NCBI RefSeq assembly: GCF_902459465.1
Contig: NW_022985717.1
Span: 62,001-126,000, forward strand
Source: Asterias rubens
Taxonomy: Eukaryota
Direction: 5' to 3'
DNA length: 64,000 nt
The first letter of the stretch is position 1; every line of letters begins with the position of its first letter. This document shows positions 10,369-48,200 of the stretch, piece by piece. The notes under the pieces were generated by a model, which was not told the origin of the DNA, ran no database searches, and worked only from the letters and a program-made list of their open reading frames with translations. A program made the position numbers and the translations under genes.

Positions 10369-11335
10369 TGTAGTGGACGTTCTCTTTTTCTACAATCTTC
10401 TCGCTATGAACGGGGTCGACGGCTTCCCATCATAAACAAGTCAGTTGGTCCCTAGGTATTTCGCTCCAGTTCCATTTATCAACTTATTGTACTGATACAT
10501 ATATGAACATGTATGTATATATAGGTATGCTGTGCATATATATATATTTTTTAATGAGGCTGTTGACTATAACAGCACCTAATATTTAACGAGATACTTC
10601 AATTTGCTGAACTGTTAAGATTCAGATAACTAGTCAAATTATCATAGAATGTATAGGGTTAGTGACCGGTTCCCTTCCGAAGTGTGTCATACAAAATTGA
10701 ATCCGGGAAGTCTTCTGCAAAGCAGGTCTTTAGAATTAGGCTCCTACTTCTGTTTTCGCCCTTTTAGTAGTCATACATGTACCTCTAAAGAAATCCTTTG
10801 CTGGTTTCTAAGCAATATTTAGAGTGTCCAAGTTTGTGTGTGTGTAGTGCGTCATGTTAGAGAATGGAACCAGTGGTGTGTCTATGTATGCTCTGACGAG
10901 AGTGCGTATTCCTGGTTATCCAATACCTGTTTCGGTTGAAGTGGCCATTGGTACATCACTGGTCAATAATTGAAACAGTTTTTGATTCCAGCAACTCATG
11001 GTCCACTCATAGGAACTTCAGGCGTATTTTGACCGCAGAGCCATCTGTGATTCCAGAAAACAGTTTGTGGCTTAGTGGACTCGATTTGAACATGTTGAAT
11101 AGTTGAGCAGATTCCTGGTGTTCAAGCCACAGCGGAGAATTTGAGCCTAAAATTTTAAGCCTACAATTTCCCCCATCATAATAAAAAAAACATAGTACAG
11201 AGCCCTAGAAGTGCCATCTGATTCTTTGGGACCCTTAGCTACAGTTATCTTATGAAAAACAATTTCTGTTGCAGAAGTTTAAAATGACAATTTGCATTTA
11301 TTTGTCACCCAATCGTAACCACCTCTACAATTAAT

Positions 11336-11627
11336 CCATCCACATTTCTGTGTTCCCCGACTTGAGCATCTGTACAATCTAAGCTTAAACTGACCATCCA
11401 CATTTCTGTGTTCCCGAGCCTTATCTAAAGTACAATGGAAGCTTAAAGTGACCATCCACATTTCTGTGTTCCCGAATCTAAACTCCAGTACAATGGAAGC
11501 TTAAACTGACCATCCACATTTCTGTGTTCCCGAATCTAAACTTCAGTACAATGTAAGCTTAAACTGACCGTCCACATTTCCGTGTTCCCGAACCTAAACT
11601 CCAGTACAATGTAAGCTTAAAGTGACC
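11336..11627. repeat. Tandem repeat, 5 x 58 bp (subterminal)
   Basis: CCATCCACATTTC-type unit starts at 11336, 11394, 11452, 11510 and 11568. Reverse-complement remnants occur at 22803-22822 (20/20) and 22865-22881 (16/17). Confidence 0.92.
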
Positions 11628-12091
11628 AACTAAATTTTTCTGAATTTAAACTCCCAGGGGTCCAAACAACGCATCCTTGGCTGATTGGCCGTACGCATAA
11701 GAACCAGAGAAATGTATCAAGCATGATATGTAAATGACTTGATGACGGCATTCGGGTCACTTTTTAAAAACATCAGTGAATCTTTTTTAAACCTTGTTTT
11801 AGTGACACTTGGGTCTTTATTACACTCCAGCAAACAAGAAATTAAACATAAAGTTTATTTTTTAGTCTCATTCATGTACTTCCTTAAGGAGTTATCTCTA
11901 ACCACTTGACATAAGTGATCTTCTTGCTTTCATTGGTGAGGTAGAGACTGAGGCAAGTTCAACAAACCTGGCTGCTACAGAAGTTGTCAACTGCTCGCCA
12001 GTCTTTCGAATGTCTTCTGGGACATGAACGGTGTTTTATTTCCAGTAATTTGAGATTGATAGCCAACCTCTACATAATCATATTTTCTTAC

Positions 12092-12770
12092 CTGTTCCAT
12101 TAGCTGTATTCAGCTCTTGCAAGCTCTTTCGGTACCTCCTCCAAATTGATGTTTTATTCTCCACTGCTGGGAGAAGCCGTATCCATGGATCCGATGGCTT
12201 TATTGATGGCACTCAGCCTGGAATGGTCAGTGCTCTCTCCTCAGCAAACATCGTGACAAACCTCACGGCTCTCTCAATGTCTTAAAGGACGAATTTTCGA
12301 GTGTTTTGCTGAACCAACCGCTGTGCTTCTCCATAATTTCTATCCCATTGGCACCATAGTGCTTTGTCAGCTTAGTTATGTATTTGTCACTGACCCTTGG
12401 AAATAAATAAATGGTTTTGGTTTTAGATTCCAAATCCTAGAGTCGAAACAAATGTCTTAAAACTGTACAGGAAATAGGAAGGGGTAATTTTCCTTTCCAC
12501 CACATTTAAAATTCTTACCGACAACCTGGGTTGATTCTTTAAATGTATTTTCCAACTTACTTGTAAATGAAGCAATACGAGTCTCCACAGACTCGAAGCC
12601 CATCAACATGGTAGCCCATTGTAGATCTTTTGTGCTGCCGCTCTTTCTGTTTTTGTTTCTTGGTCTCCGTCATTGGTCCGGCTTGAACACCACTGGTGGA
12701 CAACTTCCCAAGCAAGAACATCATTTTCTCCCGTGGGTTAGGGGCATTCATTGCATCTTGATGCTTAGCT
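12092..12770 (-). pseudogene. Sola-type DNA transposase, N-terminal fragment (two exons: ~12770-12561 and 12395-12092)
   Basis: ...RSTMGYHVDGLRVCGDSYCFIY|KVSDKYITKLTKHYG...RAVRFVTMFAEERALTIPG*VPSIKPSDPWIRLLP...TSIWRRY. Canonical splice sites, one frameshift and one stop. It resembles the region upstream of the CWxC motif in Sola-like transposases. Confidence 0.55.
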
Positions 12771-13084
12771 ATGGCAGTGTACGTCCTGTATTTAACTGAA
12801 TGCCCAGGACTATCAGCGCGACCATCTCCTCCAATGGTCAAAGAGTAGCCAACACCCTTGACTATCTTCTTGATGCTTAGCTCTATGGCAGGGTACGTCC
12901 CGTATTTAACTGACTGCCCAGGACTATCAGCACGACCATCTCCTCCAATGGTCAAAGAGTAGCCAACACCCTTGACTATCTTCTTGATGCTTAGCTCTAT
13001 GGCAGTGTACGTCCCGTATTTAACTGATTGCCCAGGACCATCAGCACGACCATCTCCTCCAATGGTCAAAGAGTAGCCATCACC
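12770..13084 (-). pseudogene. Kolobok-type transposase first-catalytic-Asp exon fragment, 3 x 114-bp in-frame tandem copies
   Basis: GDGYSLTIGGDGRAD(G/S)PG(Q/H)SVKYGTY.AIELSIKKIV is repeated with an exact 114-nt period (12822, 12936, 13050) and is preceded by an AG acceptor at 13085-13086. Confidence 0.72.
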
Positions 13085-13299
13085 CTTGATAGATAGATAT
13101 ATAGCTACATAAATAAACAGATACACGAAGATTAGGCCTAATGGTGTATTATTAAAAATTTTAAAAAAGAGAGACATTACAATCAGAAGATTGAATTGCA
13201 TCTAAATACACTTACAACAAATCAATTACGAATTTATTAGAAAATTACAATAACAAATTTAAACACTACTACGCTTTCACTGGTACCCATGACAACCTA

Positions 13300-13895
13300 A
13301 AGCTCAGCGTACTCCCCATGAAAGGCATCCTCTTTAGAAATAACTTGGTACATGTTGCACTCCAACATATCCAATAAACCAGCAACATCTTCAATTAACT
13401 GGACAGTTTGGTCATACACAATGGTTTTTACAGTGTTCCATATGTCCAAGGCGTGCAAATGTGTAAACTCACTGAAGGGAAAAACAGTGTGACACTCATC
13501 GAGTATTTCTTTAAATGTCAAGATGGAAAGTCTACATGCATTCATGCTAAATCTTGACTTGCATACAAGTGGTCACTACTGTCTGTCAGTAATGTTCCTT
13601 TGTATTTTGGACACCTTGGTCATACACAATGGTTTTTACAATGTGCTATACACGCGTACTTCCAAGGCGATTATCATGCATGCAATTGATGTATATCGCT
13701 CACAAAACTCTCTTAACGGAAAAACAATGTAACACTCATTGACTATTTCTGTAATAGTGTCAAGTCGGAAAGTCCACATGCTAAATCTTGACTTGTGTAC
13801 AAGTGGTCACTATTGTTTGTCAGTAATGTTTCTTTGTATTCTTGTAGCTTGCTGTCTGTCACAGTAACACCTTGGCATTCAGCTGATCCTAGCCC
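13300..13895 (-). pseudogene. RecQ-like (transposon-associated helicase) C-terminal fragments, partly duplicated
   Basis: ...YKETLLTNNSDHLYTSQD...ILDECHTVFPFSE...IWNTVKTIVYDQ. These match the continuation of the RecQ-Zn segments at 16060-16330 and 19900-20270. Confidence 0.45.
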
Positions 13896-13899
13896 ATGC

Positions 13900-15825
13900 T
13901 GTGGGATGTTAACACCTCACGGTGTACTATCGGTGACAGCCTTCCTGATGGCATTCAAGCAACTCACTTGTGTTCGCCGATATCGCTGCTTAAACAGGCC
14001 GAAGCACCAATCAAGTTTTTATTATTATTATTATCTTTGACCCAAACAACGCAAAATGTACAGAAACAAGATAGCAGCTCAAAATAATAAAGATGTACAA
14101 AATATCATGAAAGCAAACACAACAAATATAAGATGAAGAGAATAAAAAAATTTAAAAACATGTATAAACATCTTAAAAGGGTCTATACAACATTAAAACA
14201 ACTAACCAAGGACGAACCAAAATGCAAAGTGCAAACTTTGTTTGGCCAACAACCATGAAGTACAGCTGGATGGATTTGTGGAGGCCACAATGCAGTCTCA
14301 AGCAAGTACATCAGCATGAAGCGGTTCTGGTTTTGGCCGCTGCATTTGTCAAAGTGAAGTTGAATATTAGATTTACCCAATCCATACTGACCGAGAAAGG
14401 GGTGGACGAAGCTTATGACGGCACTGCTACCTTTGGAGGAAACCACAGATTGTTCAACCAGGTAGTTTAACATGCTTGGTCACCCCTTCACAGTGCACAC
14501 CAAAAGTGCCCAGTTTCCTTGGAGTCGGGAAGTAGACGAGGCCAGGCTGCAAAGGGTCAGATGGATATAATGCATCTGCTATGTGAAGTCAATAGAATAA
14601 TGCATATTGATGGGTTTGCTTCATGGGTTGTTTGGTCCCAGACGAACTCCTTCCCCCTCTGCCGATTCCTTAGACTCCTTCACCAGATCCCTGTAGAATG
14701 TCCTCTCCATGGCCAGATTGGTGAGATGCTCCTGTTGTTTTCTACAGCGCTTCTGCTTCTGTTCATCGGGAAGGTTTGCAGATTTGTAGACTAGGTTGTT
14801 GTTTTTCTGACACTGCCAGCAAACATCAGACAAAAATTTTCAAAAAGTAATTACGGCCACATTGGTAAGATGGTCCTGTTGTTTTCTACAGCACTTCTGC
14901 TTCTGTTCATCGGGAAGGTTTGCAGATTTGTAGACTAGGTTGTTGTTTTTCTGACACTGCCAGCAAACATCAGGCAAAAATTATCAAAAGGTAATAACGG
15001 CCAGATTGGTGAGATGGTCCGGGTCCTGTTGTTTTCTGCAGCGCTCCTGCTTTTTTTCATCGGGAAGGTATTTGCAGATTTGTAGACTGGATTGTTATTT
15101 TTTTGACACTGCCAGCAAACATCAGAGATCAGTTTGCAGCAAACAATGAATGGACAGACCACATTCCAGATTTTTTGAAATGTTATCAGAGTTCTGGTTT
15201 TTGCCGCTTCCATTGTCACAGTGAAGGTGAACATTTGATTTCCCATCCCATACTCACTGAGAAAGTGGTGGACACCTAAAATGCCCAGTTCCTTGGAGTC
15301 AGGAAATAGACTGGGCCAGGCTGCATAGGGGCAGATGGATATAATGCACCTGCTGTGCGGAGTCAAAGGAATAATGCATATCGATGGGTCTGCTGCATGG
15401 GTCATTTGGTCCCAGATGAACTCCTTCCTGCTCTGCTGTTTCTTTAGATATGCTTCCTCAGATCCCGGTAGAAGGTCCTCTCCATGGCCACGTTGGTGAG
15501 ATGCTCCTGTTGTTTTCTACAGCGCTCCTGCTTTTATTCATCGCAAAGGTTTGCAGGCTTGTATACTAGGTTGTTATTTTGTTGACACTGCCAGCAAATA
15601 TCAGACAAAATGATCAAAAAGTAATAATGGCCACATTGGTGAGATGCTCCTGTTGTTTTCTACAGCGCTTCTGCTTCTGTTCATCGGGAAGGTTTGCAGA
15701 CTTGTATACTAGCTTGTTATTTTGTTGACACTGCCAGCAAACGTCAGAGATCAGTTTGCAGAAAAACATGAGTGGACAGACCACCACATTCCAGATTTTT
15801 TTAAATGTTGTCAGAGCAACCACCC
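13900..15825 (-). pseudogene. Sola-type DDD transposase central/catalytic region, degraded, with internal duplications
   Basis: In order on the minus strand: SDVCWQCQKNNNLVYKSANL (5 copies at ~146-150 bp spacing), MHYSFD.AQQVHY...QPGPVYF.TPR, SKGSSAVISFVH, LHFDKCSGQNQNRFML, GLHKSIQLYFMVVGQTKF, DWCFGLFKQRYRRT. Multiple frameshifts. Confidence 0.68.
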
Positions 15826-16059
15826 TTGCATCTATTCAAAAACAATTATCAAAAAGTAATAATTATAATTAAAAAAACTTTACAACAAGTTTTGTGGCTC
15901 ATACATGTATTTCAATCATGAAAATCAAAAGGGAAAAAAAGTCAGATGATGTAACGATGTGTATTTTTATAGTAAAACAACCTCATCGTGACCTTTTTTG
16001 CTTTAGATATTCTGGGGAATTTACACAGGCTTGCTTTATCTTGGATTTTGTTAACTATT

Positions 16060-16560
16060 TTCATCTTCTATTTTCATCTTCTGATCTTCTTTCGGTTCCG
16101 AAACATTGCTGTCTTCCTCAGTAACAACTCTCCATTCAGCTGTACCTAGCCCATGCAGCAGGATATCCTTTATCTTTTGTTCAGCATGTGATGGTTCAGC
16201 TGAGCATGTGTTTTCATCACATGTACATGTTTTTGCACAAATGTCACAGCAGTTGTGTTCTTTCATCACCACTAGATGGGAAGTTGTTCCGGATGGCTAG
16301 TCGTCTACGTTTCTTTTCTTCTTATGCTAGCTAGACAAGTTTAAGATTCTTGTTGTTTGCTTCTTTTACTAGAAGATGCTTGCAGACATCAAAAGTCTGA
16401 GTCCACAAGTCCCTGCAGTATGACACTATACCACCCCTTGCGGTTGTGATAGTCTGTATAGAATGACTTGGTAGCTGAAATTTGGGTGAGCCAGCGTCTC
16501 CCCATGAAAGGCAACCTCTGCCGACTCCAACATGTCCAACAAAACAGCAATGTCTTCAGT
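16060..16560 (-). pseudogene. Chimeric fragment: Harbinger transposase piece joined to RecQ Zn-binding domain piece (copy 1)
   Basis: ISATKSFYTDYHNRKGWYSVILQGLVD (HARBI1/DDE_Tnp_4 motif) is followed by RRLAIRNNF...EHNCCDICAKTCTC (RecQ_Zn_bind-like). A near-duplicate lies at ~20030-20480. Confidence 0.62.
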
Positions 16561-17900
16561 GAACTTTGGTCATACACAATGGATTTTTACAGTCTTCCAT
16601 ACTTTCAAGGCGATTTCCTTGCGTGCAAATGTGTATCGCTCACAAAACTCACTGAATGGAAAAACAATGTGACACTAGTTGACTATTTCTTATAGTGTCA
16701 AGTCGTTAAAGAGGCCGTCTAAGAATTACTAAACCAGTGAAGTTTACACATTTCTGGAAGGTTATGTTATAAAGACACTATATTTAATTAGGTTGTTAGC
16801 CCTTGAGGCATGGTATTTATTTTAAATGTCATTTATGTCCAACCCGCATGAGTCCTGTTTTAAGAAAAGCGAGAGGTCATCTTTGTTTACATCTTTAGAA
16901 TGTGTGACGTCACAATTAGATGACCAGTGCATGCTATACATGTTGCTGCGCGAAGTGTATTACGCTAGGGATGCACGCAGCAGCGACGATAATACCAACT
17001 TGAATATCCCACTGTTGTATACAAGTACACTCGTGTATATACATTTACTAGATACTCGTGCTTGTATGTCGTGTACATGTACTTGATCCATGATCACGAT
17101 TCATTTTGGACGACTTTCATGCATGATTTACATGTGTAAGAAGTTTATTGGGGCGATTTGGTCGACTGACCATCATGGCTTGGCTTGTGTAGTCTGGCAC
17201 CTTTGTTATACGTCCTGGTTTCCCATTAGCAATATACACAATACGTACAGTAGTACTGGACTCGAGAGACTCGAGACGCAGCAATGTCGTCTCGTGTGTA
17301 TCGGGAAAACATATCATAATGTCAGATACGGACGGTTCCAATTTTTGGGAAGAAAGTAGTGTCACTTCAAACCTGTAAAAATTCAGATTTAATTGGTCAT
17401 CAAGTTTCAAGAAATTAATACATTTGTTGCAAAAGGCCGTGTTCTTTCAGATGGCAATAGTAAAAGGCTTCGCTGAAGTCTCATTATTTGAGTGAGAAAT
17501 TTCTTTTTTTGCTAAGAAACTACGTTACATCAGAGCAAGTCGATTCTAACAATGTTTTATACTGTCAATTTCTGGTCACCAAGACAATTGTTTTGAGTAA
17601 TCACCAATAATGTCCAAAGCCTAGAACACATAGTGCATACAAAGACAAACATGTCACCAATGTTGCAAAGTGGCTCAAATTCATTGAGCACTGATGTAAA
17701 ATAATGTTTCTCTTGATTCGTCTCCCAAGTTGTCAGTCTTTCTTTAATTGGTGTTGTACACGCATTAAAAGAAAAATGATGAATAAATTAATTCTTTACT
17801 GAAAGTCGTTTCTCTTGCTCATTGTGTTTTTTCCCCTTTTCACATCTATTGCACCCGTCTGCCATTTTTCTTTTTTTCTCACACGAGATGGAACTTAAAT

Positions 17901-19870
17901 CTACTCTGTTTGGGATGTCTCTCCTCGGCTGCTTTTCTTTCTTTTTCGGCTTCTCTTTTTCACTTCTGATCCCTGATCACTGTCATCTTCGGTCCTATTT
18001 TTGTTCATTCCCTTTTCCCTCTGTCTTTTTGCTGACTTCCCCTTTTTGTCTTTATTTCTACTCTTCTTTCTCTTTGTCGCTTCATCCTCAACTACCAAGT
18101 CTTCCGTTCCTTCTGGTTTCCCCACTGGTGCTACAGACTTTGAAAATCTCGACACAAAAGTGGAGACTGCTGTTGCCTTGTCCGGCTTGGTGTGCTTGAG
18201 AGTGAGAGGCCCAGGGTTCTTCATAAGCTGGCTGTATCTTGACCGTGCATCTTTGCTGCCTTCCTCGAAAAAGCCTAAGAGTCTGGTCAATTATGCGCTG
18301 GTTGTATTCTAGGACAAAAACAATAAAAGATGAACCTTGTGTATTCCAATGCTTTTTTAGAAGGCAAGATACTGCACTGGTCACTACAGGGCACGGCTTA
18401 TAAATGTATGTGTACTTACTATAAGTGCAATGCACCAGCCTTTTCCGCACAGTGTATCCACCAGTATCCTGTTTTGCCCTTGGGTAACTGATGGTGAAGG
18501 CCAATCTTCCATCAGTACTCCTTGCTTGCTCCCTGCCAGTGTTTTCGTTGTAATGCAGGGCAGCCAGATAAACCCTGTAGACCAAGCAAAGAACATAAAA
18601 CAAACAAGTTACAGTAAAGGCTTTATGTGTTTTGGGATTTTTGCACAGTGTCATTGCTTTTAAAAGTATGCTTTTCCATAGGTTAAAATTCCATTTTATA
18701 TTTGACTAGGGGCTCACCTGCAGAGCATGCCATGGTAGGAATATACAAACATCTTCGGAGCAAACTGATTTATCAGCGAGTGGAAGGCTTCCACGGAAGA
18801 TGTCTGCATCGATGAGGAGAGCATCCGCACATCCTTCATGAGCCAAGGGTTATCTAATAGTTCTGCAACTTTCTCAGCAGGTTTAGATCCTGAAAAATTG
18901 AAAAAAAAAAAAAAAAGGTAACTTTAGAAGCTACCGGGAAATATACAAAAAGAATGTACATGTGTGCAAAAACAAATTAAATGTGATTGTAATGTACAGA
19001 CATAGTACACATTGTAAATAAATTTTACAAATGGAGTTAAAAATGCACAGATTAGGGAAACTAACACTTGTCAAGAAATAGTTTTGGGTTTGGGTTGTCG
19101 TCTTCTTTCAAAAATTTGCCTAGCAATTGGAACTTCAGTAAAAACAAACTAATTATCATACCAGGGATAAGCCATCTTTGGGGTGGCAAGGGACCATGAA
19201 TACACTTCGGGTACAGTGGGTTACCATGCTCATGAACATCCAGTACATGGTTTATGGCGCTCTCAAACTTAGCCCACATCAGGTCTGGGTCACAACCTGG
19301 CGTCGACGCAGCAACCCAGTAGAGATTGTTGACTATTGAGCTCACCCAATCCTTTATTGTTTCGCACCCCTTTGGTTTTGCAGCAGCCAGCAGCTTTTTC
19401 TTGAGTCCTGCGAAAGCAATATGAAATAGAACACATTTTGTGAGTTACACTTTTTAATCAGAGGAATAACTACTGTACAGCAAAATCACTTTTATAGACA
19501 ATTTGTGTTGTTTATAAAAAGATTAAACGTGTGCCTGCAGGAATGCAGTATAGGTTTGAGTACAGCATAAATTTAAATGTTCTTTGTCTAATGTGGTTCT
19601 CAAAAATGCTACAAAAGACAATACGCTATTAAAAATTTTATGTCATGTTTATAAAGATGTTCTAACAAATTTACCCTTAGCAACGTGCCAAATGTCAAAA
19701 AAGTGGCTGGTTCCGCGAGGTTGAAGCTCATCTCGGATGTACTTGGTTATCTGTCTGTGACGATCCGTCACGATGGTGCCGATCTTGACTCCCATTTTGT
19801 CAGCCCACTTCACTGATCTCACGAGACCCTCCTTCTCCATCAAGTTCGACTTGAAACTAGTTTCACTTTT
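17901..19870 (-). pseudogene. Kolobok-type DDE transposase, C-terminal ~390 codons in five exons (19870-19675, 19407-19162, 18889-18718, 18574-18420, 18308-17901)
   Basis: All GT-AG introns are phase-compatible. Motifs: MEKEGL...IVTDRH..ITKYIR...HFFDIWHVAKG, NNLYW, NHVLDVH, KCIHGPL, QTSSVEAFHS, LAALHYNEN, PDKATAVSTFVSRF. The only lesion seen is +1 nt in an A5 run at 18268-18272. The 5' exons are missing. Confidence 0.8.
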
Positions 19871-19899
19871 CTGTAAAATTAAAGGTATTGATGTTAATC

Positions 19900-20480
19900 A
19901 ATTAAAACCCAATGCAATCTTCCTCCAGAAATGTTTGTTCATGATAGTGACTTTCCCAGCTAAATCTTGACTTGTATACAAGTGGTCACTACTGTCTGTC
20001 AGTAATGTTTCTCTGTATTCTTGCAGACTTTCTTTCAGTTCTGAAACATTGCTGTCTTCCACAGTAACAACTCTCCATTCAGCTGTACCTAGCCCATGCA
20101 GCAGGATATCCTTTATCTTTTGTTCAGCATGTGATGGTTCAGCTGAGCATGTGTTTTTATCACATGTACATGTTTTTGCACAAATGTCACAGCAGTTGTG
20201 TTCTTTCATCACCACTAGTTGGGAAGTTGTTCCGGATGGCTAGTCGTCTACGTTTCTTTTCTTCGAATGCAAGCTTGACAAATTTTTAGAGTCTGGTTGT
20301 TTGCTTCTTTTATTTGAAGTTGCTTGCGACATCGAAGAGACAAGTCCACAGGTCCCTGCAGTACTATCCTGTACCATCCCCTTGTGGTTGTGATAGTCTG
20401 TGTAGAATGTCTTGATGGCCGAAATTTGGAAGTGGCTTCCTTCAACTGCAACCCTACATTGGGGAAAACACAGCTTCTGT
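19900..20480 (-). pseudogene. Chimeric Harbinger + RecQ-Zn fragment (copy 2)
   Basis: Near-duplicate of 16060-16560, continuing into RVVTVEDSNVSELKESLQEYRETLLTDSSDHLYTSQDL. Confidence 0.6.
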
Positions 20481-20689
20481 TCAAAACCTTCAGATTGGAC
20501 TGCTGTATCCTACTGTATGGGTTGAGTACTTTGCATATATTGCTTAGCAATAGACCTTTTCGCAAATACCGGGGCGCGCGCGTAAAGCTTGGAATTAGGT
20601 GCATTGTGGTCTAGCTGGTATCCAAATTTGATCCATATATATCCCACAATGCACCTCATTCAACAGTCTGCGCTTGCGCATTGGTATTT

Positions 20690-21245
20690 GCGATAAGGTC
20701 TATGCCACACAAGCACCAACATTGTGGGGTATGTTACTTTATGTCACGCTCGTTCATTTTCAAAAGACACCGCCATCTGTTTTTTTAAATGCCCGAAAGC
20801 ATTTTCAACAATCATACGACTTCTGCTGTGAATATAATTATAGTGCACCTGTTGACAGGTCAAGTTTCCATAGGGATAGGGTTTCATTAAAAAAGTGTCT
20901 TCTTTATACGCCGAATATCCAAGTATGACGACTGGAACTTCTGCACCTTTTATTGGCCTGAGCTTGTTGGGGGGAAAAACTTCCCTTTTGTCAATTTGTG
21001 TTTCAGTGAAGAATGTTCAAATACCCAACTGTCATGGCATTTTCCTGGCCAACCAATGCCGATATCGGTAAACCTATAACAGAAGTCGACAAGTCCTTTC
21101 CGAATGACACTATACCACCCCTTGCGACTGTGGTAGTCCTTGTGGAATGACTTGGGGGAACCCCCACATTTGGGGAAACCCCACTTCTGTTGGAAACCTT
21201 TGATTATGGTTTTGGTATCCTCTGCAGATGAGGCAGTTACATATG
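20690..21245 (-). pseudogene. PIF/Harbinger (HARBI1-like) transposase catalytic core, degenerate
   Basis: IKGFQQKWGFPKC...DYHSRKGWYSVI..GLVDFCYRFTDIGIGWPGKCHDSWVFEHSSL...VPVVILGYSAY...LMKPYP...NYIHSRSRMIVENAFGHLK, with frameshifts. Confidence 0.82.
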
Positions 21246-21899
21246 ACGACGATAGTTTGATTTAGCATTGTTAACAAGGTCTCTGTATATGATACACTGT
21301 TCTTTGTACAACTCATCATGCACAGCAAGGCAAGATTTTATCCACTTTCGCTCACGACGACATTTCTTTATTCAATAATTTAGTTGTCCATTAAAAAGAT
21401 AAAAATGGAAAAATTACATGTCAAAACATTGATAAAAAGCTCCAGGACAGAAAACTAAAAGATACAGAAATATTTATAAAACTAGGATTTACATGAACAC
21501 TGATGAAAGATAAGTTAAAAACACAAAAGAACCAAACAAAAACACCACATTTAAGCAAAAACTGCCCAAACCTCTCTGCTCCCACAAGCCGTATGATAAA
21601 AATAATCAGTAAAAACCCACTAAGAATAAAGTATTAGCTACTTGCATCAGCATTTATTTACAGAAGCAAATCGATGGTCCTTTAAGTTAGTTATACACAG
21701 AACATACAAAATAACAATTTAAATCATTTTTCATGGATCTAGCTGTGACACCTTGACCCCGTCGCAGCATGCCCTGAATGCAACACTTTCTTCACATGGA
21801 ACAACAACAACATAAATTGATAGGTTTCAAAACAGTTCTTCACTCAAGGAGCGAACCTCCTGAATCAAGTATAGTAGGGCCGGAGTAACTTCCTATATG

Positions 21900-22555
21900 G
21901 TTTCATCGTCCTCTGCGATTTGACTGAGTATAGTTTCATTTATTTTGTCAAAGTTACGCCCGTCATTTTCATGAACTTGAACAAATCGTCCGTTTGACTG
22001 GGAAGTTTTATTTCTTGTCCTCGCTAACTGGTTGACCAGACAGTGAAATACACAGTTGCCCTTTTCGGTGTTTCATTTCTCTCAAGATATCCAAGTGTCA
22101 TGGCATAGGCGATTAAATCATCTTTTGCTGTATCGGCAGTGTCTTGTGAAGTAGTATCTTTAAATATGCATGAATGAAAGCATTCAATCTTTTGAAATCG
22201 TCGCCACACTTATCACTCCTCTGTGCCTCACCAGATCCAATACACTATTCCTTGTTGTCGCAAACTGGTTTTCCAGACGGTGAAATAAACAGTTGCCTTC
22301 CTTCGGTGTATCACCTCTCTCCAGATATCCGAGTTGCATGGCATAGGCGATTAAATCATCTTTTGCTGTATCGGCAGTGTCTTGTGAAGTAAGAAACTTT
22401 AAATGTGCATGAATGAAAGCGTGTAATCTTTTGAAATAGTCGCCACTCTTTTCACTTATTTTCTGAAGAAGAGCCTCCAAGAACGCATTGTCTACCATAT
22501 TATGTGATGACAATCTGCATTTTTGTTTTGCGAGTGCGCAGCAATACCAGTGCAT
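21900..22555 (-). pseudogene. OTU-like cysteine protease N-terminal fragment, tandemly duplicated
   Basis: LGYLERGDTPKEGNCLFH resembles the OTU catalytic-Cys motif (DGNCLF). A second copy reads LGYLERNETPKKGNCVFH (~22060-22190). Confidence 0.5.
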
Positions 22556-23408
22556 TGGATGTGTACATCCCGGGTCTGTGTCCCTTGTGCACTGTTCGTC
22601 TTCACACTGGCATCTTCACTTCTCAGTCTACTGCCCACATTCAATGACGGATAGTTCTTAGCCTGTGGCATGGTTTGGTGCATGAGGAATCAATTATGTC
22701 GCCGTGAAATCCAGAATTGACACAAATGCTGCACAAAGCAAATGATTATACCTTAATTTCTTTAATTACGATAATTTAGCTCAGAAACAAAAAAAATACA
22801 AATGGTCAGTTTAAGCTTCCATATCAAGTTTAAGTGTCCATGTGTGAAATTGCTTAAGTAACATGGATGGTCAGTTTGAGCCTCTGTACTTAGATGAAAA
22901 AGAAAAGATGGCTTCATCTTTAGAGAATAATTTACCAGGTGACATGTCTGCCTGTTTACTAACCCCCCCCCCCCCCACCGTCCCCCCCTCCCCCATAAAA
23001 TGAAACAACATATATATGTTCTGATCTTGACAAGTTCTAGGGCACTTTAAGAGCTCTGTACAAAGGTGTTTAGATCTTGATATTTGAACCCAGGTTTTAG
23101 CTCACAAAATGCCCCACATTAGATGTATCTTAATTGTCTTGAACACTTGTAAAATGTTCTGTATGTTTATTTGTGTTTGCTTGTAACTTCAGCCTTTTGT
23201 GTTTATGTTTGAGTTTCTTTTTAAATGTTTATATTCGGTGGTACAGTAATTTAACTGCAAACAGGGTTCATTATATAAAAAGTTGTAAGATTATTGCAAA
23301 TGCCTGAAAAGGTTTTAAGAATTTATTTTTTATGAGTAACAGAATAGTATTTTGTAAAATCTTAATCAAAGTCATCCCAGCTGGGGCCAATATTGTACAA
23401 CTTGTTAA

Positions 23409-29627: not shown

Positions 29628-32600
29628 ATGTCTGCTCAAACATTTGTGAGGTATGTATGTTCTCTAGGATAGTATTCTATGTTCTCTCATTCATGTTGTG
29701 GACAAATTACCGTATCCTGTAGCAATTTTGCATTCTTTTTCGTCAGCAGGTCAGTCACTCAGTGCGCTTTTCTAGACCCAGTGTCAGTGACTGGGGCGCT
29801 AGTTCCTTTTTTGAAATGTCGACATTATCGGTCATCTAGATGACCATGGAGCAATGACCGATAATGTCAAAATTTCAGTAGAATCATTAAAACATGGCGG
29901 CGCCCAATATCATGTCACGTTAAATGTAATTTTTGTACACGTTTTTTTGGACCAATTTTCAAATCATCACATCTGGATGAAGTCATCATTTAGTATAGTA
30001 AGGCCTGTGGTGATGTGCATAGTAATTCCACAAATGTAAGGAATAAAATGAGGTATGTTGGAGTAGTATTGGACTTTTTTAAATGGGAGAAATTTGCATT
30101 CAAACTACCTCGCATTTTGCGACCTTTGAAAACTTAGCGTTTAAGACATGTATCGAAGGTGGGCTGTAATATGGTGACACTCCAGTGATGAGACCGATGT
30201 TAAAAGCGGAGCCAATAACAGCTCAACAAGGTGGGCTATATAGATTCTAGGTAGAAGTACTTTGTGGGATGGAGCAAGATACGGAATGTAATATGGTATC
30301 TAATTTACCTCAATGAGATATCTAGTTGCGATAATCGTAACCCTCCATCCTCCCGACGGTCGGAGACCGGAGGGTTACGACACAAGACTGATATTATCGG
30401 TGTAACTAGCAGTTTTGACCAGTTTTTGCCAGACTCGTGATCAGATTCGTCCTTTTTTTCCACTTTCCAAAATCATGACAGACATTCTAAACACATGGAG
30501 TTGATCTTTATTGTATGACAACGTCATCTGGAACCCTTAAAACTACATCATGAAAATATTTGGCAGAAAAAACGACAAAAACTTACCAAAAGACTGACCG
30601 AATATATCCATAATCCATAGCGGGACCAACTAGTGATTTTGATGTCGCACTTGCTTGGCAACAACCAATCAGCGTGACCCAACCATCGATGTCGTATGCG
30701 TATCGGCCATTCCAGCTTGCAAACTCACCGCACTGTGTGTGTAAGCACCGATCCCCCGCACCGAGTGCGCAGCATGCAGGCATGTACATGTACATGTATT
30801 GTGTACACTTGCACACACACACACAACGTCAGGGTTTGTTTGGCCATGTGGGGGTATGGAGCAGCACACGGTACTTACGAGCTGTATAGTTTGTGCACGC
30901 ACGATGTTCATACAGTACATGTACATGTACATGTACATGCCTGCATGCTGCGCACTCGGTGCGGGGGATCAGTGCTTACACACACAGGCGGTGAGTTTGC
31001 AAGCTGGAATGGCCGATACGCATACGACATCGATGGTTGGGTCACGCTGATTGGTTGTTGCCAAGCAAGTGCGACGTTCAAAATCACTAGTTGGTCCCGC
31101 TATGGATTATGGATATATTCGGTCAGTCTTTTGGTAAGTTTTTGTCGTTTTTTCTGCCAAATATTTTCATGATGTTGTTTTAAGGGTTCCAGATGACGTT
31201 GTCATACAATAAAGATCAACTCCATGTGTTTAGAATGTCTGTCATGATTTTGGAAAGTGGAAAAAAAGGACGAATCTGATCACGAGTCTGGCAAAAACTG
31301 GTCAAAACTGCTAGTTACACCGATAATATCAGTCTTGTGTCGTAACCCTCCGGTCTCCGACCGTAGGGAGGATGGAGGGTTACGATTATCGCAACTATGA
31401 GATATCCCTTTTTGTTAAAATGAGTGAAATAGTGGTGGTGGCAGCAGGATATGGAAAGTTATAATTTACCAAAAAGGTAACATCTTTGATGCCAAACAAT
31501 GAAAACGTGCAATGATAGGCTTGTTGATATATAATTGTCGTTTTCTTTTCCATACCATTCAATAGGTGTATGCTAGGTCTACTTACACCAATGCTGTTTG
31601 TGTTATTGCCGTTCCTCCCCCTGGGGATCTTACTCTTCTACTTCTTGAGGCGGAGAGTCCAGCACCAAGGGAGACTCCAGTTTGGCCACCTGAGGGAGCC
31701 AGGCAGTGATGGACAACAGCCAATTGTGGTGGGTTTTTTCCATCCGTACTGTAATGCCGGAGGTGGTGGCGAGAGGGTTTTATGGTGTGCTATTGCTGCT
31801 CTGCAAGACAGGTATTAAACATTGACAAATCTCTCCCAACCCTAGGTGATGAGCTCCAACCAGGGCCCAATTTCATTGAGCTGCATTTAAGCAAGAATAT
31901 TGCTAATCAGAAATGAGCAGGATATCAGTCATAAACTGTACCTGTAACTACATGGTAGCTCAGCTGGTAACCTTATTCTGGTAAGCAACATTTTGTTGTG
32001 CTCAGCTACTTTTTGTGCTTTAAAACAGCTCCATGGAATTGGGTCCAGGGCCAAACTCACAGAGCTGCTTTTAAAAGCAAAAAACATTGCTTTTAAAAAC
32101 ATTTTGTGCTAAACAGAGTTGAGCAGGACACCAGCCAGTCACAAATTGTACACGCTACATGTTTTGGGTTGTAACTTATTCTGGTAAGCAAAAATTCTGT
32201 TTGCACTTTGATACTTTTTCTGCTTTGAAAGCAGCTCTGTAATATTGGGCCCTGTTTAGCATGCGGCATGCCTGATTTGATGTTTCTTCCCTGAATGAAG
32301 GAACCACAAGCTTTAAAAAAATATTTGAACCTGTACTTACAAGCACTGGACACTATGGGTAACTACTTAAAGTAAATTTTAGCATTAAAACTTACTTGGT
32401 CTTGACTATGGAGAGCTTTTGAAAGTTTAAAACATAGTGAGAAACGTCTCCCTCTGAAGTAAGAAAGTTTTGAGAAAGAGGTAATTTCTCACTCACATAT
32501 AAATAAACTTCAGACCTGAAGCCTTATATAGACATCTGAAAGCAATTCAATTCACCTTATTGTGAAAATTGTGCTGAACCCAGGGGGGTGATGGACAAAA

Positions 32601-36008: not shown

Positions 36009-36391
36009 AAGCAGTGGACACTATTGGTAATTGTCAAAGACTAGCCTTCACAGTTGGTGTATCTCAACATATGCATAAAATAACAAACCTGTGAAAATTT
36101 GAGCTCAATCGGTCATCGAACTTGGGAGATAATAATAAAAGAAAAAACCACCCATTTGTCACGCGAAGTTGTGTGCGTTTAGATATGGTTGATTTCGAGA
36201 CTTCAAGTTCTAAACCTGAGGTCTCGAAATCAAATTCGTGGAAAATTACTTCTTTCTCGAAAACTATGTCACTTCAGAGGGAGCCGTTTCTCACAATGTT
36301 TTATACTGTCAACCTCTCCCAATTACTCGTCACCAAGAAAGGTTTTATGCTAATAAATATTTTGAGTAATTACCAATAGTGTCCACTGCCT
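36009..36391. mobile_element. Kolobok-type family A MITE
   Basis: TTAA|AAGCAGTGGACACTATTGG...CCAATAGTGTCCACTGCCT|TTAT. Confidence 0.72.
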
Positions 36392-45200: not shown

Positions 45201-48200
45201 GGGGAGGTTACAGGTTAAAAAATTGAGGCATGTGTGACTGTACCATGGAGGAAGGAACTAGGCTGTACTAAGACAATAACTTTTGTTTATTGAATGAATG
45301 ACACATTTTTGTACCTTATAAATGTACAATGTAGTACAATATACATATAAAATGGCTAAGTGGGCATTTACTTTATTTCACGTATGGTTGGTACAGGGTT
45401 TCAGGCCTGATACTTCGCGAAGGCAACGAAGGCGTTTGCCCCCATGCCCCCTGGTCATTGCCTTGATGCCCTTGAACTGCTCCAGTTCAAATTTGCAATT
45501 TTCTCATAGGGTGTCTTTTACCAAGGAGAAAATGCCTTGGTGCCCTTGCACTGTAAAAAAAACTAAGCAAACCGGCCTGGGGTTTGCCCTTAAAGGGAAG
45601 GTACACGTTTGGTAATTAGTCAAAACCAGTATTAACTTAAAAACTGACTTGGTAACAAGCATTGGAGAGCTGTTGATAAACTTTTTGAGAAACAGCTCCC
45701 TCTGAAGTAGCATAGATTTTGAAATAGGGGTAATTTCTCACTTAAATAATAAAAGACTTTATAGCTAGAAGTCTTTTATTTCTATCTGAAAGCACACAAA
45801 TTTGTCCAACAAGGGTGTTTTTTCTTTCATCATTTTCTCCCAACTCCGATGACCAATTGAGCTCAAATTTTCACAGGTTTGTTATGTTATGCATGTGTTG
45901 AGATACACCAAGTGAGAACACTGGTCTTTGACAATTACCAATAGTGTACCTTCCCTTTAACTTTTCCAGCAACTAGCCAGCAAGTCCAGCTAGCTTCTCA
46001 TGTATAGCTGGGCCGCCAGGCTTTTCACTGGTCTGTTAAAATGTCAACATCTAGCATGGGACTTCATCAAGGGTTGTTGTCCTTAATTTATTTAAAGGCA
46101 GTGGACACGACACTGTTGGTAACTGTCAAAGACTAGCCTTCACAGTTGGTGTATCTCAACATATGCCTAAACTAACAAACCTGTGAAAATTTGAGCTCAA
46201 TCGGTCATCGAACTTGCGAGATAATAATGAAAGAAAAAAATACCCTTGTCACACGAAGTTGTGTGCGTTTGGACAGTTGATTTCAAGACCTCAAGTTCTA
46301 AACTTGAGGTCTCGAAATCAAATTTGTGGAAAATTACTTCTTTCTCGAAAACTATGGCACTTCAGAGGGAGTCGTTTCTCACAATGTTTTATACCATCAA
46401 CCTCTCCCACTGCCTTTAATAGTCACAACTATGGCACTAGTCGCCCAGTATTCAAGACTAAAACAATGGAGCTTTATGCAGAACAAGAGATGTTAAAGCA
46501 GATTCTTCTCAAGTAGTCATCTTTTAAAACGTATGTTTAAAGGGTCTATGTATTTTTCTTTTGTAGGACAAAAAACACAATGTCCACAGATTTACACTAA
46601 ACTTACACAGTTTGAAGATAATGATAGTAGAAAGCTTCCCTGAAAATATTACGTGCTGAGGTGCTATACATGTAGTTTTTGGGAAATGAGTAAAACAATG
46701 TCATGAAAATAATTTTTGTCTCATGAGACGAAAATGATAGTAATATAATAATTTACAAACGTATTTTCATGACATTGTTTTACTCATTTCTCAAAAACTA
46801 CAGCACCTCAGTGAGTAAAATTTGAAGGGAAGCTTTCCACTATCATTATCTTCAAACCCTGTAAGTTTAATGTAAATCTATGGACATTTTGAAAAAGTAC
46901 CCAAATCCTTTAAAATGTCAAGCGCAGGCTGAGTTCCCTATATGAAATTTAGGCTCAGGGCTTGGACTTTGGAGTGTGGTTTTGTTATCAACATCAAACC
47001 ATTCCAGGTACCTATACTGTTTAGACAAATTTATTGACCTTGCAATGATTACATTATTTGGGAGTGTTATCAAGTCCCTATGAAGTACCCTTTAAATTCC
47101 TGCCCACCCAGTAAAATAGGGGGGTCTACTCATCCTCTCAACCTCCCAATCTGATGAAGTACATGAAGCTGTTATTGCAATGATGCATTTTTCAAATGTG
47201 ATTTTTAAACGCTAGTACAGTACCATGTACAGGGCCTTGTTTTATCTACATATTTTAGACTAACACGAGTATCTCTGTCCTTTATCCTATCGTCTTCTCA
47301 CAAGTAAATTGACATACACGTGTTGTACTATAATGATGCGCACACGATACGAATGGTAGTAGTCAAAATCCAGTCTTCTCACTTTGTGTATCTCAACATG
47401 TACATGGAATCACAAACCTGTGAAAATTTGAGCTTGATTGGTCATCGGAGTTGCGAGATAACTATGAAAGAAAAAAAACACCCTTGTCACACAAAGTTGT
47501 GTACTTTCAGATGCTTGATTTCAAGACCTCAAGTCTAGAACTTGAGGTCTCGAAATCAAATTCGTGGAAAATTACTTCTTTCTCAAAAACTACACCACTT
47601 CAGAGGGAGCCGTTTCTTGCAAGGTTTTGTACTATCGACCTCTCCCTATTACTAGTTACCCATTCAGGTTTTATGCTAATAATTATTTTGAGTATTTACC
47701 AATAGTGTCCATTGCCTTTTAATTCTCCCTGATATTCATGTACTGTAGTAGCCTTAGAAGCACAAATAGCATTAGAACTTAGATACGATCTATTTTAGAT
47801 ACAGTACAATGGGGCTAGAGCTCCGGCATGTTAATCTGGAGGTCGTCAGTGGCTCAGGTCCTGCAGTAGTCAAAGTTTTGGGCCATTTATTTGTCTGCAA
47901 TTATCCCAATTCCATTTTAATACAAGGATTGTGTTTGCTAGATACGCACCTTGGTGCATCACAATATAAAAGGCTAATACATGTACATGGGGTACCTTTA
48001 TTATGTAATGTAGGTCAGCTGAGTATTTGTAATTTAGGGATCTTTAGAATGAATAAATGTTGACAGTCCTTGTAGTTCTTGGCAGTTCACTGCTTTAGCC
48101 TGTGTTATGCCTTTTGCCTTAAAGGCAGTGGACACTATTGGTAATTACTCAAAATAATTATTGGCATAAAACCTTTATTGGTGACGAGTAATGGGGAGAG

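What the first reader, a model, noticed from the sequence alone, without database searches (positions are those of the whole stretch)
11195..23061. 12-kb co-oriented mosaic of at least five unrelated mobile-element genes inside one pair of inverted ends (candidate Pack-type 'transposon of transposons')
Seen in sequence: on the minus strand only, fragments of a Kolobok-type transposase (12770-13084, 17901-19870), a Sola-type transposase (12092-12770, 13900-15825), a Harbinger transposase (16400-16560, 20340-20480, 20690-21245), a RecQ-like helicase C-terminus (13300-13895, 16060-16330, 19900-20270) and an OTU-like protease (21900-22555) abut directly. I saw no internal TIRs or TSDs at the junctions. 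The block is bounded by 18/21 inverted termini and inverted subterminal repeats. Established knowledge: ordinary nested insertions keep their own ends and occur in both orientations, whereas Pack-MULEs, Pack-CACTAs and Helitrons acquire end-less fragments, often co-oriented. Inference: a non-autonomous element built by repeated template switching among other transposons' coding regions. I know of no described animal element with this cargo, but I cannot search to confirm novelty.
Basis: partly seen in the sequence, partly recalled or inferred. Interest (0 to 1): 0.78.

Follow-up and report, generated by a model that had tools for sequence, protein, structure and literature searches.

The report
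Old transposon shell packed with transposon debris
A 12-kb stretch bounded by real Tc1/mariner-type inverted ends holds same-strand fragments of four transposase families and a RecQ-like helicase, but part of this content arrived by ordinary nested insertion and local duplication, so it is an unusual but explainable dead transposon and not a demonstrated 'Pack' element.

Summary
The observation largely holds. The 18/21 inverted ends, the inverted subterminal repeats and the minus-strand gene fragments are all present. Public contigs from about 12 studies contain the block, so it is not a misassembly.

The ends are flanked by TA. They belong to an abundant TA-target (Tc1/mariner-like) MITE clan. 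A sister family in that clan has a 16-kb and a 34-kb copy that are 99.6-100% identical.

Fragment identities:
- Harbinger: Pfam DDE_Tnp_4.
- RecQ-like C-terminus: through a paralogue on contig 15.
- The 'OTU' piece: part of a Ginger1-type integrase-OTU transposase.
- Kolobok: supported by its signature features.
- 'Sola': shown only to be a DUF7869-type transposase.

The claim of no internal ends is wrong. The block contains:
- a polymorphic 155-bp MITE;
- two short interspersed repeats;
- a genuine TTAA-flanked Kolobok-type terminus, with only 12 bp of its target missing.

Much of the repetition comes from local tandem or segmental duplication. The block, its ends and its junctions are single-copy. 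Nothing shows it ever moved with this cargo, and template switching is neither shown nor excluded.

Most likely this is an old non-autonomous Tc1-like element filled by nested insertions, then rearranged and decayed. The same scan had already noted giant non-autonomous Tc1-like elements elsewhere in this genome. Interest is modest.

The parts
11196..11197 (.). TA flank (putative target-site duplication), left
   Evidence: TA flanks most ends of the related MITE family and both giant sister elements.
11198..11242 (+). Left terminal inverted repeat, starting CAGAGCCCTAGAAGTGCC.
   Evidence: 48 bp are similar to the MITE-family terminal repeat.
11336..11654 (+). Tandem 58-bp subterminal repeats, about 5 units. 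Each unit carries a TIR-like motif, GGAAGCTTAAASTGACCATCC.
   Evidence: The motif is itself the terminus of a sister TA-target family.
12120..12752 (-). N-terminal part of a DUF7869-type ('Sola-like') transposase gene. Homology starts at an ATG.
   Evidence: 80-85% DNA identity to L022:4842-5563, which lies upstream of that copy's CWxCQ zinc motif.
12756..13201 (-). Kolobok-type first-aspartate region (GDGRADSPG motif), a 114-bp unit repeated 2.9 times. It sits downstream of the rest of the Kolobok gene, so it is displaced.
   Evidence: In other copies (L056, L059) this region lies about 150 bp upstream of the second-aspartate region.
13257..13898 (-). Two older partial copies of the RecQ-like C-terminal region (middle plus tail, then tail again). 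They are uninterrupted at the Kolobok insertion site.
   Evidence: 69-74% identity to L023.
13899..15837 (-). Internal fragment (aa 238-506 of 652) of a DUF7869-type transposase, with 144-bp tandem duplications. No element ends are present.
   Evidence: 83% identity to L021. No inverted repeats at the boundaries.
16084..16326 (-). RecQ-like zinc-motif piece, copy 2.
   Evidence: 91% identical to 20030-20270.
16327..16491 (-). Harbinger DDE N-terminal piece, copy 3.
   Evidence: It lies within the 16087-16485 stretch that is 91% identical to 20030-20429, and is 83% identical to 21084-21155. Sequence.
16492..16690 (-). RecQ-like tail that continues the 19959-20270 piece across the Kolobok insertion.
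   Evidence: Only 12 bp of the target are missing.
16706..16709 (.). TTAA next to a genuine transposon terminus.
   Evidence: The sequence TTAA|AGAGGCCGTCT is seen with different flanks in contigs 18 and 19; a fourth copy on contig 7 aligns from the same position, but its flanks were not read.
16710..19958 (-). Kolobok-type element, 3' two-thirds. It holds the transposase from the second aspartate to the C-terminus (19882-17791) and the 3' terminal region (16710-17044). It is 5'-truncated.
17368..17628 (.). Short interspersed repeat nested inside the Kolobok part.
   Evidence: Copies occur in both orientations elsewhere in the window and in other loci. Very high contig depth.
19959..20270 (-). 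RecQ-like zinc-motif and middle piece, copy 1.
   Evidence: 82% identity to L023; aa 26-124 of the 209-aa C-terminal ORF.
20271..20509 (-). Harbinger DDE N-terminal piece, copy 2.
20550..20703 (.). Young 155-bp palindromic MITE, polymorphic.
   Evidence: 60-nt arms. Dozens of copies at 99-100% identity. Absent in runs X2 and X17, where the joint runs 20549->20702.
20747..21337 (-). Harbinger transposase fragment (DDE_Tnp_4 profile positions 16-129).
   Evidence: Pfam E 5e-6 for two pieces.
21372..21630 (+). Discrete interspersed repeat of about 265 bp, with an A-rich tail on the plus strand.
   Evidence: Four copies whose flanks diverge at the same points.
21896..22615 (-). Two tandem partial copies of the start of the OTU domain of a Ginger1-type integrase-OTU transposase.
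   Evidence: 48% identity, E 4e-30, to aa 356-465 of the rve+OTU protein L048:439-2658. Duplication shown.
22802..22884 (-). Inverted copies of the subterminal TIR-like motif.
23014..23058 (-). Right terminal inverted repeat, ending CTCTG.
   Evidence: 38-43 bp are similar to the MITE-family repeat.
23059..23060 (.). TA flank, right.

Best explanation
The block is one old, single-copy, non-autonomous DNA transposon of a TA-target (Tc1/mariner-like) clan. Its ends are CAGAG...CTCTG, and TIR-like motifs are repeated just inside them. It has no transposase of its own type and is most likely immobile and without function today.

Its interior is a pile of other mobile-element genes that arrived in the usual way and were then reshaped in place. 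A Kolobok-type element inserted at a TTAA inside a RecQ-like gene fragment and later lost its 5' third. Two short interspersed repeats and one MITE inserted later, and the MITE is still polymorphic. Fragments of a Harbinger, a DUF7869-type ('Sola-like') transposase, a Ginger1-type integrase-OTU transposase and the RecQ-like C-terminus were cut down by deletions. They were multiplied by local tandem and segmental duplications with units of 58, 114, 144, about 210 and about 237 bp, plus a roughly 0.4-1 kb Harbinger+RecQ unit.

Shown: the ends and TA flanks, the fragment identities, the duplications, the nested insertions, single-copy status and neutral divergence after duplication.

Inferred: that the two ends belong to one element; that the end-less fragments result from insertion followed by deletion or rearrangement and not from templated capture; and that the shared orientation is largely inherited through non-inverting duplications plus chance.
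For: Ends:
- The 18/21 TIR, the TA flanks and the inverted subterminal motif are real.
- The terminus belongs to an abundant MITE family: at least 199 first-look candidates and 89 scored matches, mostly TA-flanked.
- A sister family moved 15.8-kb and 34-kb copies that are 99.6-100% identical and have TA flanks. The clan can therefore carry large interiors.

Ordinary insertions inside the block:
- A TTAA-flanked terminus is shared with copies on contigs 18 and 19, whose flanks differ; a contig-7 copy aligns from the same point (flanks unread).
- Only 12 bp of the RecQ target are missing across the 3.25-kb Kolobok insert.
- The MITE is absent in other individuals.
- The 265-bp repeat has sharp borders in four copies.

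Local duplication:
- Searches show it. 16087-16485 matches 20030-20429 at 91%. The differences are spread 2/3/2 over codon positions, with 1 synonymous and 5 non-synonymous codon changes, so the copies are evolving neutrally.

No sign of mobility as a unit:
- The ends, the interior and the junction unit have no other copy.

No own enzyme:
- No Tc1-type transposase domain is found on either strand.

Not an assembly artefact, and old:
- The block is held by 20 runs from 12 studies. Part of it, including a RecQ/Harbinger junction, is present at about 90-95% identity under another species label.
Against: - Several junctions join internal points of unrelated ORFs, with no detectable element ends.
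- The N-terminal parts of the Kolobok and DUF7869 genes lie together, downstream of their own C-terminal parts. The breakpoints are complementary to within about 30 codons. Simple insertion plus deletion does not predict this.
- The RecQ-like pieces differ widely from one another (72-91% identity). One copy (13257-13898) never carried the Kolobok insert. My simplest model, three tandem copies of one nested unit, therefore fails in detail.
- The RecQ-like gene is low-copy, with one other DNA-level locus. It may not be a transposon gene at all, which would make it captured cargo.
- All the transposase and helicase fragments I searched for in the window lie inside the ends. That fits capture as well as it fits nesting.
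Confidence: 0.55

Rival explanations
1. Pack-type origin. After excision attempts or breaks inside the element, gap repair or replication restarted on other templates. It stitched end-less pieces of transposase genes and a RecQ-like gene between the two ends. This corresponds to the 'gap-filling' or FoSTeS-type route described for animal Pack-TIRs. Ordinary insertions came later.
For: - End-less internal ORF fragments abut unrelated sequence without inverted repeats.
- Fragment order is scrambled while orientation is kept.
- Many short tandem duplications look like slippage.
- A low-copy RecQ-like gene fragment is present in five partial copies. Its divergence from the contig-15 paralogue is enriched at third codon positions (14/9/24), so it came from a gene that was then under selection.
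- The cargo is confined between the ends.
- Single-copy Pack-TIRs formed without transposition are the common kind in animals, and TcMariner elements host 115 of 370 (PMC8277862).
Against: - The largest piece (Kolobok) has a true TTAA-flanked terminus and a near-intact target, so it transposed in.
- No candidate parent lies within the window, although single-copy Pack-TIRs show a strong bias to parents closer than 15 kb.
- Captured pieces are typically about 224 bp, not 2-3 kb.
- No close parents exist in the genome for testing microhomology; the best are 80-88% identical.
- Template switching does not by itself predict one orientation.
Confidence: 0.22
2. Transposon trap or single-strand small-RNA (piRNA) cluster. 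The block is kept because read-through transcription of the plus strand yields antisense RNA against several transposon families. This would explain the shared orientation.
For: - All coding fragments from five families are antisense to the plus strand.
- The neighbouring ALG11 gene is on the plus strand.
- Another first-stage note raised this idea.
- Contigs from two runs guessed to be RNA lie on parts of the block at low depth.
Against: - No small-RNA data were available.
- The RNA label of those runs is a guess. Their contigs also cover the flank and show no splicing.
- At about 12 kb the block is small for such a cluster.
- Orientation agreement among about five independent insertions happens by chance about 1 time in 16.
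- One nested repeat has its A-tail on the other strand.
- Duplicates evolve neutrally, though that is also expected for a small-RNA source.
Confidence: 0.1
3. The two ends are unrelated solo ends of an abundant family. They happen to bracket a transposon-rich patch, so there is no single element.
For: - The terminal motif belongs to a family with hundreds of copies.
- A third, weaker match lies at about 5900 in the same window.
- TA flanks are only 2 bp.
- No second copy proves unity.
Against: - The two ends face outward.
- Beyond the clan-wide terminus they share a specific subterminal motif in inverted orientation, which typical family members lack.
- They enclose the whole patch of coding fragments with margins of only 0.4-0.9 kb.
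- At roughly one family copy per 2 Mb, two ends 12 kb apart in the correct orientation are unlikely by chance.
Confidence: 0.08

Closest known systems
Non-autonomous Tc1/mariner-type elements, including unusually long ones
   Same: TA flanks, ends CA...TG, repeated TIR-like motifs inside the ends, and no transposase of its own. In the same genome a sister family has 15.8-kb and 34-kb copies with TA flanks. An earlier scan note reports a 6.7-22 kb non-autonomous Tc1-like family (I did not check that note).
   Different: Single copy. No autonomous partner was identified. The interior is made almost entirely of coding fragments of other transposon superfamilies.
Pack-TIRs of animals (Tan et al. 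2021, PMC8277862); Pack-MULE and Pack-CACTA of plants
   Same: A TIR element whose interior holds end-less pieces of genes from elsewhere. Single-copy cases are the common kind in animals. TcMariner hosts are frequent.
   Different: Pack-TIRs are defined by non-TE cargo with an identifiable parent. Captures are typically about 224 bp, and single-copy cases have nearby parents. Here the cargo is mostly transposase genes, the pieces reach 3 kb, no nearby parent exists, and the largest piece entered by its own transposition.
Nested transposon clusters ('TE graveyards')
   Same: Transposons inserted into transposons, later truncated. Younger insertions (MITE, short repeats) keep sharp borders. Divergence is neutral.
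   Different: All coding fragments share one strand. Their order is scrambled without inversion. The cluster is confined exactly between one pair of inverted ends.
Foldback-type elements and FB-mediated capture (Ssk-FB4 in Drosophila, PMC8277862)
   Same: Ends built partly of tandem sub-repeats. Such repetitive ends are linked to rearrangement and capture.
   Different: The repeat arrays here are short and unequal (5 units against 2). The flanks are TA, not a 9-bp duplication.
Single-strand piRNA clusters such as flamenco
   Same: Co-oriented fragments of several transposon families in one short region.
   Different: No small-RNA evidence. The size is much smaller. The region is bounded by transposon ends.

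Membership tests
Tc1/mariner-type (TA-target) TIR element | TA target-site duplication at both ends | tested here: met
   TA|CAGAG...CTCTG|TA at 11196-11197 and 23059-23060. Most of about 25 ends of the related MITE family and both copies of the giant sister element are TA-flanked. TA is only 2 bp, so this is weak on its own.
Tc1/mariner-type (TA-target) TIR element | Terminal inverted repeats shared with other family members | tested here: met
   18/21 between the two ends. 43-48 bp of similarity to the MITE-family terminal repeat. The genome pattern search gives 4 hits against 0 for the control.
Tc1/mariner-type (TA-target) TIR element | DD(34)E/D transposase, in the element or in an autonomous relative with the same ends | tested here: not met
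   No such domain is found in the block on either strand. No autonomous relative was identified. The sister giant element carries only an rva_4/rve integrase ORF. Assignment to the superfamily rests on TA flanks and terminal sequence only.
Pack-TIR / Pack-type transposon | Non-TE sequence duplicated from a parental locus, lying between the ends of a TIR element | tested here: inconclusive
   The RecQ-like C-terminal fragments have one DNA-level relative, on contig 15, at 82%. Whether that gene is a host gene or transposon-borne is unknown. The rest of the cargo is TE-derived and so falls outside the published definition.
Pack-TIR / Pack-type transposon | Breakpoints with microhomology to the parents, and no own ends or TSDs on the captured pieces | tested here: inconclusive
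   The DUF7869, Harbinger and RecQ pieces show no ends. The Kolobok piece does have a TTAA-flanked terminus. Microhomology cannot be tested because the closest relatives are only 80-88% identical.
Pack-TIR / Pack-type transposon | Mobilisation of the chimera (further copies or an empty site) | tested here: not met
   The ends, the interior and the junction unit are single-copy. The empty-site pattern was not found in metagenome contigs, which is uninformative.
Kolobok (internal piece 16710-19958 and 12756-13201) | TTAA target duplication and 5'-RR...YY-3' termini (PMC9587614) | tested here: met
   TTAA|AG... on the plus strand, which reads ...CT|TTAA in the transposase sense. The same terminus has different flanks in two other copies; a third aligns from the same position. 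Only the 3' end is present.
Kolobok (internal piece 16710-19958 and 12756-13201) | [quoted passage not shown] | tested here: met
   Read directly from the translations. 'FDIWH' follows 'VTDRH' in 19652-19897. An H/C-rich motif lies in 19064-19444. 'SVEAFH' lies in 18717-18923. No Pfam model exists, and there is only a weak MULE match at E 0.02.
PIF/Harbinger (20747-21337 and two short copies) | DDE_Tnp_4 catalytic domain | tested here: met
   PF13359, E 5e-6, above the curated cut-off for two adjacent pieces.
Ginger1 (21896-22615) | Gypsy-like integrase followed by a C-terminal OTU protease domain (PMC2836005) | tested here: inconclusive
   The block holds only the stretch at the start of the OTU domain. 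Its relative L048:439-2658 (48% identity, E 4e-30) has rve plus OTU. Ginger1 ends and the CCGG duplication were not examined.
Sola | Sola-type DDD transposase, 4-bp duplication and family termini (features recalled from memory; no held paper defines them) | not testable with these tools
   The fragments match intact 650-aa ORFs carrying Pfam DUF7869. No Sola reference sequence or definition was available.
RecQ helicase family (13257-13898, 16084-16326, 16492-16690, 19959-20270) | SF2 helicase core of RecQ type, followed by a zinc-binding region | tested here: met
   In the paralogue L023, the ORF directly upstream hits Helicase_C and RecQ/WRN/BLM chains at E 4e-12. The block pieces align to the following 209-aa ORF, which carries the CCDIC...C motif. 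The block itself has no helicase core.
Single-strand piRNA cluster | Strand-biased 26-31-nt small RNAs across the region | not tested
   No small-RNA run was available. The only possible RNA runs are contigs, which carry no strand information.

The most novel reading that the evidence does not exclude
A TA-target giant element in a sea star acquired end-less, same-strand pieces of at least four transposase families and a RecQ-like gene by serial template switching during repair. That would be a Pack-TIR whose cargo is other transposons. Its antisense transcript could then act as a multi-family transposon trap.
Probability: 0.12. Interest if true: 0.65.

Novelty: new member of a known kind. Interest (0 to 1): 0.3.

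Why it matters
If the end-less fragments were copied in by template switching, this would extend animal Pack-TIRs to transposon-derived cargo. It would also point to one route by which multi-family antisense 'traps' could arise.

As it stands, the case mainly shows how a mosaic that looks engineered can come from ordinary events:
- one old non-autonomous shell;
- a nested Kolobok insertion with a recognisable TTAA end;
- later small insertions;
- repeated local duplication.

A more useful by-product is evidence that this genome's TA-target clan recently moved elements of 16-34 kb. That is relevant to how large cut-and-paste transposons can become.

Tried and rejected
- Chance ends: rejected.
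- Misassembly: rejected, because independent contigs span the junctions and the right end.
- Other copies of the block, its ends or its junction unit in the genome: none found.
- Inverted repeats at the borders of the two large inserts: scores were at shuffle level.
- Close intact parents for junction analysis: the best Kolobok relative is 80% identical at protein level and fragmentary. DNA relatives are 200-630 bp long at 80-88%.
- A model of three tandem copies of one nested unit (Harbinger-RecQ-Kolobok-'Sola'), each with different deletions. It reproduces the order of all pieces. I rejected it in its simple form because the RecQ copy at 13257-13898 is intact across the Kolobok insertion site and is only 75-80% identical to the others.
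- Selection on the duplicated pieces: differences are spread evenly over codon positions.
- Empty-site pattern in metagenome contigs: no hit, which is uninformative.
- Naming 'Sola' through Pfam, the ESM Atlas and papers: this gave only DUF7869.
- Expression: the only possible RNA runs are low-depth contigs without strand information or splicing.
- The large protein searches were not used. Family scans plus paralogues in the genome settled the identities that mattered.

Full report
**Setting**

The window is contig 47, positions 62001-126000, of a 417.6-Mb assembly in 150 contigs. Earlier notes of this scan call the genome the sea star Asterias rubens. I did not verify the name. The only host gene I confirmed nearby is ALG11, at 31528-35593 on the plus strand. 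The window has no N.

**The ends are real**

- A degenerate pattern of this terminus occurs four times in the genome and never for the reversed control. Two of the four are the block's own ends. A third belongs to a 369-bp MITE on contig 2, and the fourth is a lone match on contig 1.
- Searching with that MITE showed an abundant family, with at least 199 first-look candidates and 89 scored matches.
- I inspected about 25 family ends. The element starts CGGAG/CAGAG and is flanked by TA in most cases.
- The block reads TA|CAGAG...CTCTG|TA.
- Each of its ends shows 43-48 bp of similarity to the family's terminal repeat.
- Inside the left end are 5.1 tandem 58-bp units. Each carries the motif GGAAGCTTAAASTGACCATCC, and two inverted copies lie inside the right end.
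- That motif is itself the terminus of a sister TA-target family.
- One member of the sister family exists as a 15.8-kb copy on contig 8 and a 34-kb copy on contig 11. These are 99.6-100% identical, and their flanks differ right up to the TA. They carry an intact 422-aa integrase-like ORF. The clan therefore moved very large elements recently.
- No Tc1-type transposase domain is present in the block on either strand, so it is non-autonomous.

**Fragment identities**

All recognisable coding pieces lie on the minus strand.

|---|---|---|
| Harbinger | Pfam DDE_Tnp_4 at 20747-21261. Two short extra copies of its N-terminal part at 20271-20509 and 16327-16491. | 4, 8, 9 |
| RecQ-like C-terminus | The pieces align to a 209-aa ORF on contig 15 (locus L023). 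That ORF follows a Helicase_C ORF whose best solved relatives are RecQ, WRN and BLM (E 4e-12). | 41, 50, 51, 82 |
| OTU-like protease | 48% identical (E 4e-30) to residues 356-465 of an intact 739-aa protein with rve and OTU domains. This is the Ginger1 architecture (PMC2836005). | 58-61, 63 |
| Kolobok | No Pfam model exists. The translations show a second-aspartate region followed by a DxxH signature, a zinc motif, then the glutamate region, as described for Kolobok (PMC9587614). | 28, 76, 77 |
| Sola | The pieces match intact 650-aa ORFs carrying Pfam DUF7869. I could not test the superfamily name. | 64-67, 74 |

**Internal ends do exist**

- At 20550-20703 sits a 155-bp palindromic MITE with dozens of copies at 99-100% identity. 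Contigs of runs X2 and X17 lack it; the joint runs 20549->20702.
- At 21372-21630 lies a discrete repeat of about 265 bp. Its borders are the same in four copies.
- At 17368-17628 lies another short repeat, found in both orientations across the window.
- Most important is the stretch 16710-17044. It ends in TTAA|AGAGGCCGTCT, and copies on contigs 18 and 19 share this terminus with different flanks. A contig-7 copy starts at the same position, but I could not read its flanks. TTAA and the RR/YY termini are Kolobok features.
- This terminus is the 3' end expected for the Kolobok transposase that runs from 19882 down to 17791.
- The RecQ-like sequence on either side of this 3.25-kb insert is continuous except for 12 bp.
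- The Kolobok part is therefore an ordinary nested insertion that later lost its 5' third.

**Local duplication explains much of the repetition**

- 16087-16485 and 20030-20429 are 91% identical. This is a unit made of a Harbinger N-part and the RecQ-like zinc motif.
- Tandem units of 114 bp (Kolobok first-aspartate region, 2.9 copies) and 144 bp (DUF7869 zinc-motif region) were found by TRF.
- Duplications of about 210 and 237 bp affect the RecQ-like tail and the OTU piece.
- The unit copies differ evenly over codon positions (2/3/2), so they are neutral. The divergence from the contig-15 paralogue is enriched at third positions (14/9/24).

**What remains odd**

- The DUF7869 fragment covers only residues 238-506 of 652. 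It runs straight into RecQ-like sequence at 13899/13898.
- The borders of this insert and the upper border of the Kolobok insert show no inverted repeats above shuffle level.
- In two other copies (L056 and L059) the Kolobok first-aspartate region lies about 150 bp upstream of the second. In the block it sits 7 kb downstream, directly next to the N-terminal part of the DUF7869 gene, which is likewise displaced.
- Three tandem copies of one nested unit, each with different deletions, would reproduce the order of every piece. However, the RecQ-like copy at 13257-13898 is intact across the Kolobok insertion site and is only 75-80% identical to the others. The history was therefore more complex.
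- The RecQ-like gene has just one other DNA-level locus, so it may be captured non-transposon DNA.

**No evidence that the mosaic moved**

- The two 500-bp ends, the interior and the Harbinger/RecQ unit have no other copy in the genome.
- Relatives of the fragments elsewhere are 200-630 bp long and 80-88% identical.
- The best Kolobok relative is 80% identical at protein level, and most of the rest carry stop codons.
- No parent lies within the window.

**Public reads**

- Twenty runs from twelve studies hold the block.
- Contigs of run X2 cover 17310-23290 in a few pieces. These include the RecQ/Kolobok junction and the right end with its flank.
- A run under another species label (X17) has pieces of 20107-22789 at about 90-95% identity, including one contig across a RecQ/Harbinger junction. 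It has none over the Kolobok part.
- Two runs guessed to be RNA give only short, low-depth contigs that also cover the flank. Expression is therefore undecided.

**Reading**

The simplest account that fits the shown facts is an old non-autonomous TA-target element whose interior collected other transposons and was then duplicated, deleted and rearranged in place. I put this at about 0.55.

It would match the published gap-filling route for single-copy animal Pack-TIRs (PMC8277862). Four points argue against it:
- the largest piece transposed in by itself;
- no nearby parents exist;
- the pieces are far larger than typical captures;
- nothing can be tested at the junctions.

About five independent coding insertions share one strand, which has a chance probability of about 1 in 16. 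One nested repeat points the other way, if its A-rich tail marks its 3' end. Co-orientation therefore does not force a special mechanism. A small-RNA trap is untested.

**Comparison with earlier notes**

The scan had already noted giant non-autonomous Tc1-like elements and apparent Tc1-type excision scars in this genome. My independent finding of the 16/34-kb pair agrees with the first of these. I did not check the scar notes.

Noticed in passing
L008:2107 to L009:7924 (contig 8, about 20712606-20728423), and L012:1859 to L013:9157 (contig 11, about 15026355-15060656): Two copies of a giant TA-flanked element, 15.8 kb and about 34 kb. They are 99.6-100% identical over at least 14.7 kb and are the only two copies in the genome. 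The termini read CGGAAGCTTAAAGTGACCATCC, followed by tandem sub-repeats. They carry an intact 422-aa rva_4/rve integrase-like ORF (L009:5273-6538, minus strand). This looks like a very recent transposition of a very large element.
   Followed up: partly
window 20550-20703: A 155-bp palindromic MITE with dozens of copies at 99-100% identity. It is absent from this site in runs X2 and X17, so the family has been active recently.
   Followed up: partly
L048:439-2658 (contig 4): An intact 739-aa ORF with integrase (rve) and OTU domains, which is the Ginger1 transposase architecture. It may be an active or domesticated copy.
   Followed up: no
L055:880-2838 (contig 1), plus contig 2 at 7115728, contig 17 at 3848874 and contig 7 at 9665148: Four loci with open frames of about 650 aa for a DUF7869-type transposase. 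This suggests a family that is still coding. Only the contig-1 locus was fetched.
   Followed up: partly
L019:5002 and L020:5001 (contig 18 at 1920001, contig 19 at 10772000): Two copies of the Kolobok-type terminal region stop matching the window exactly at round genome coordinates. Local alignment confirms real divergence there. I cannot explain the coincidence; it may reflect how the genome is tiled for searching.
   Followed up: partly
window 17700-19900 in run X17: The run under another species label has contigs for the RecQ/Harbinger/OTU part but none for the Kolobok part. The Kolobok insertion may be absent there, or this may simply be low coverage.
   Followed up: no
window 12560-13201 (minus strand): A 214-aa open frame runs through three tandem Kolobok-derived units into the start of the DUF7869-type fragment. 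That is unusually long for decayed DNA, probably because the in-frame 114-bp duplication is young (95% identity).
   Followed up: no
window 36095-36376, 46187-46513, 47424-47702 and 52790-53074: A repeat whose translation starts KFELNRSSNL occurs four times in the window, in both orientations. It is an abundant interspersed element.
   Followed up: no
window 31528-35593 (plus strand): The ALG11 mannosyltransferase gene (Pfam ALG11_N and Glycos_transf_1), 8.5 kb from the block's right end.
   Followed up: partly
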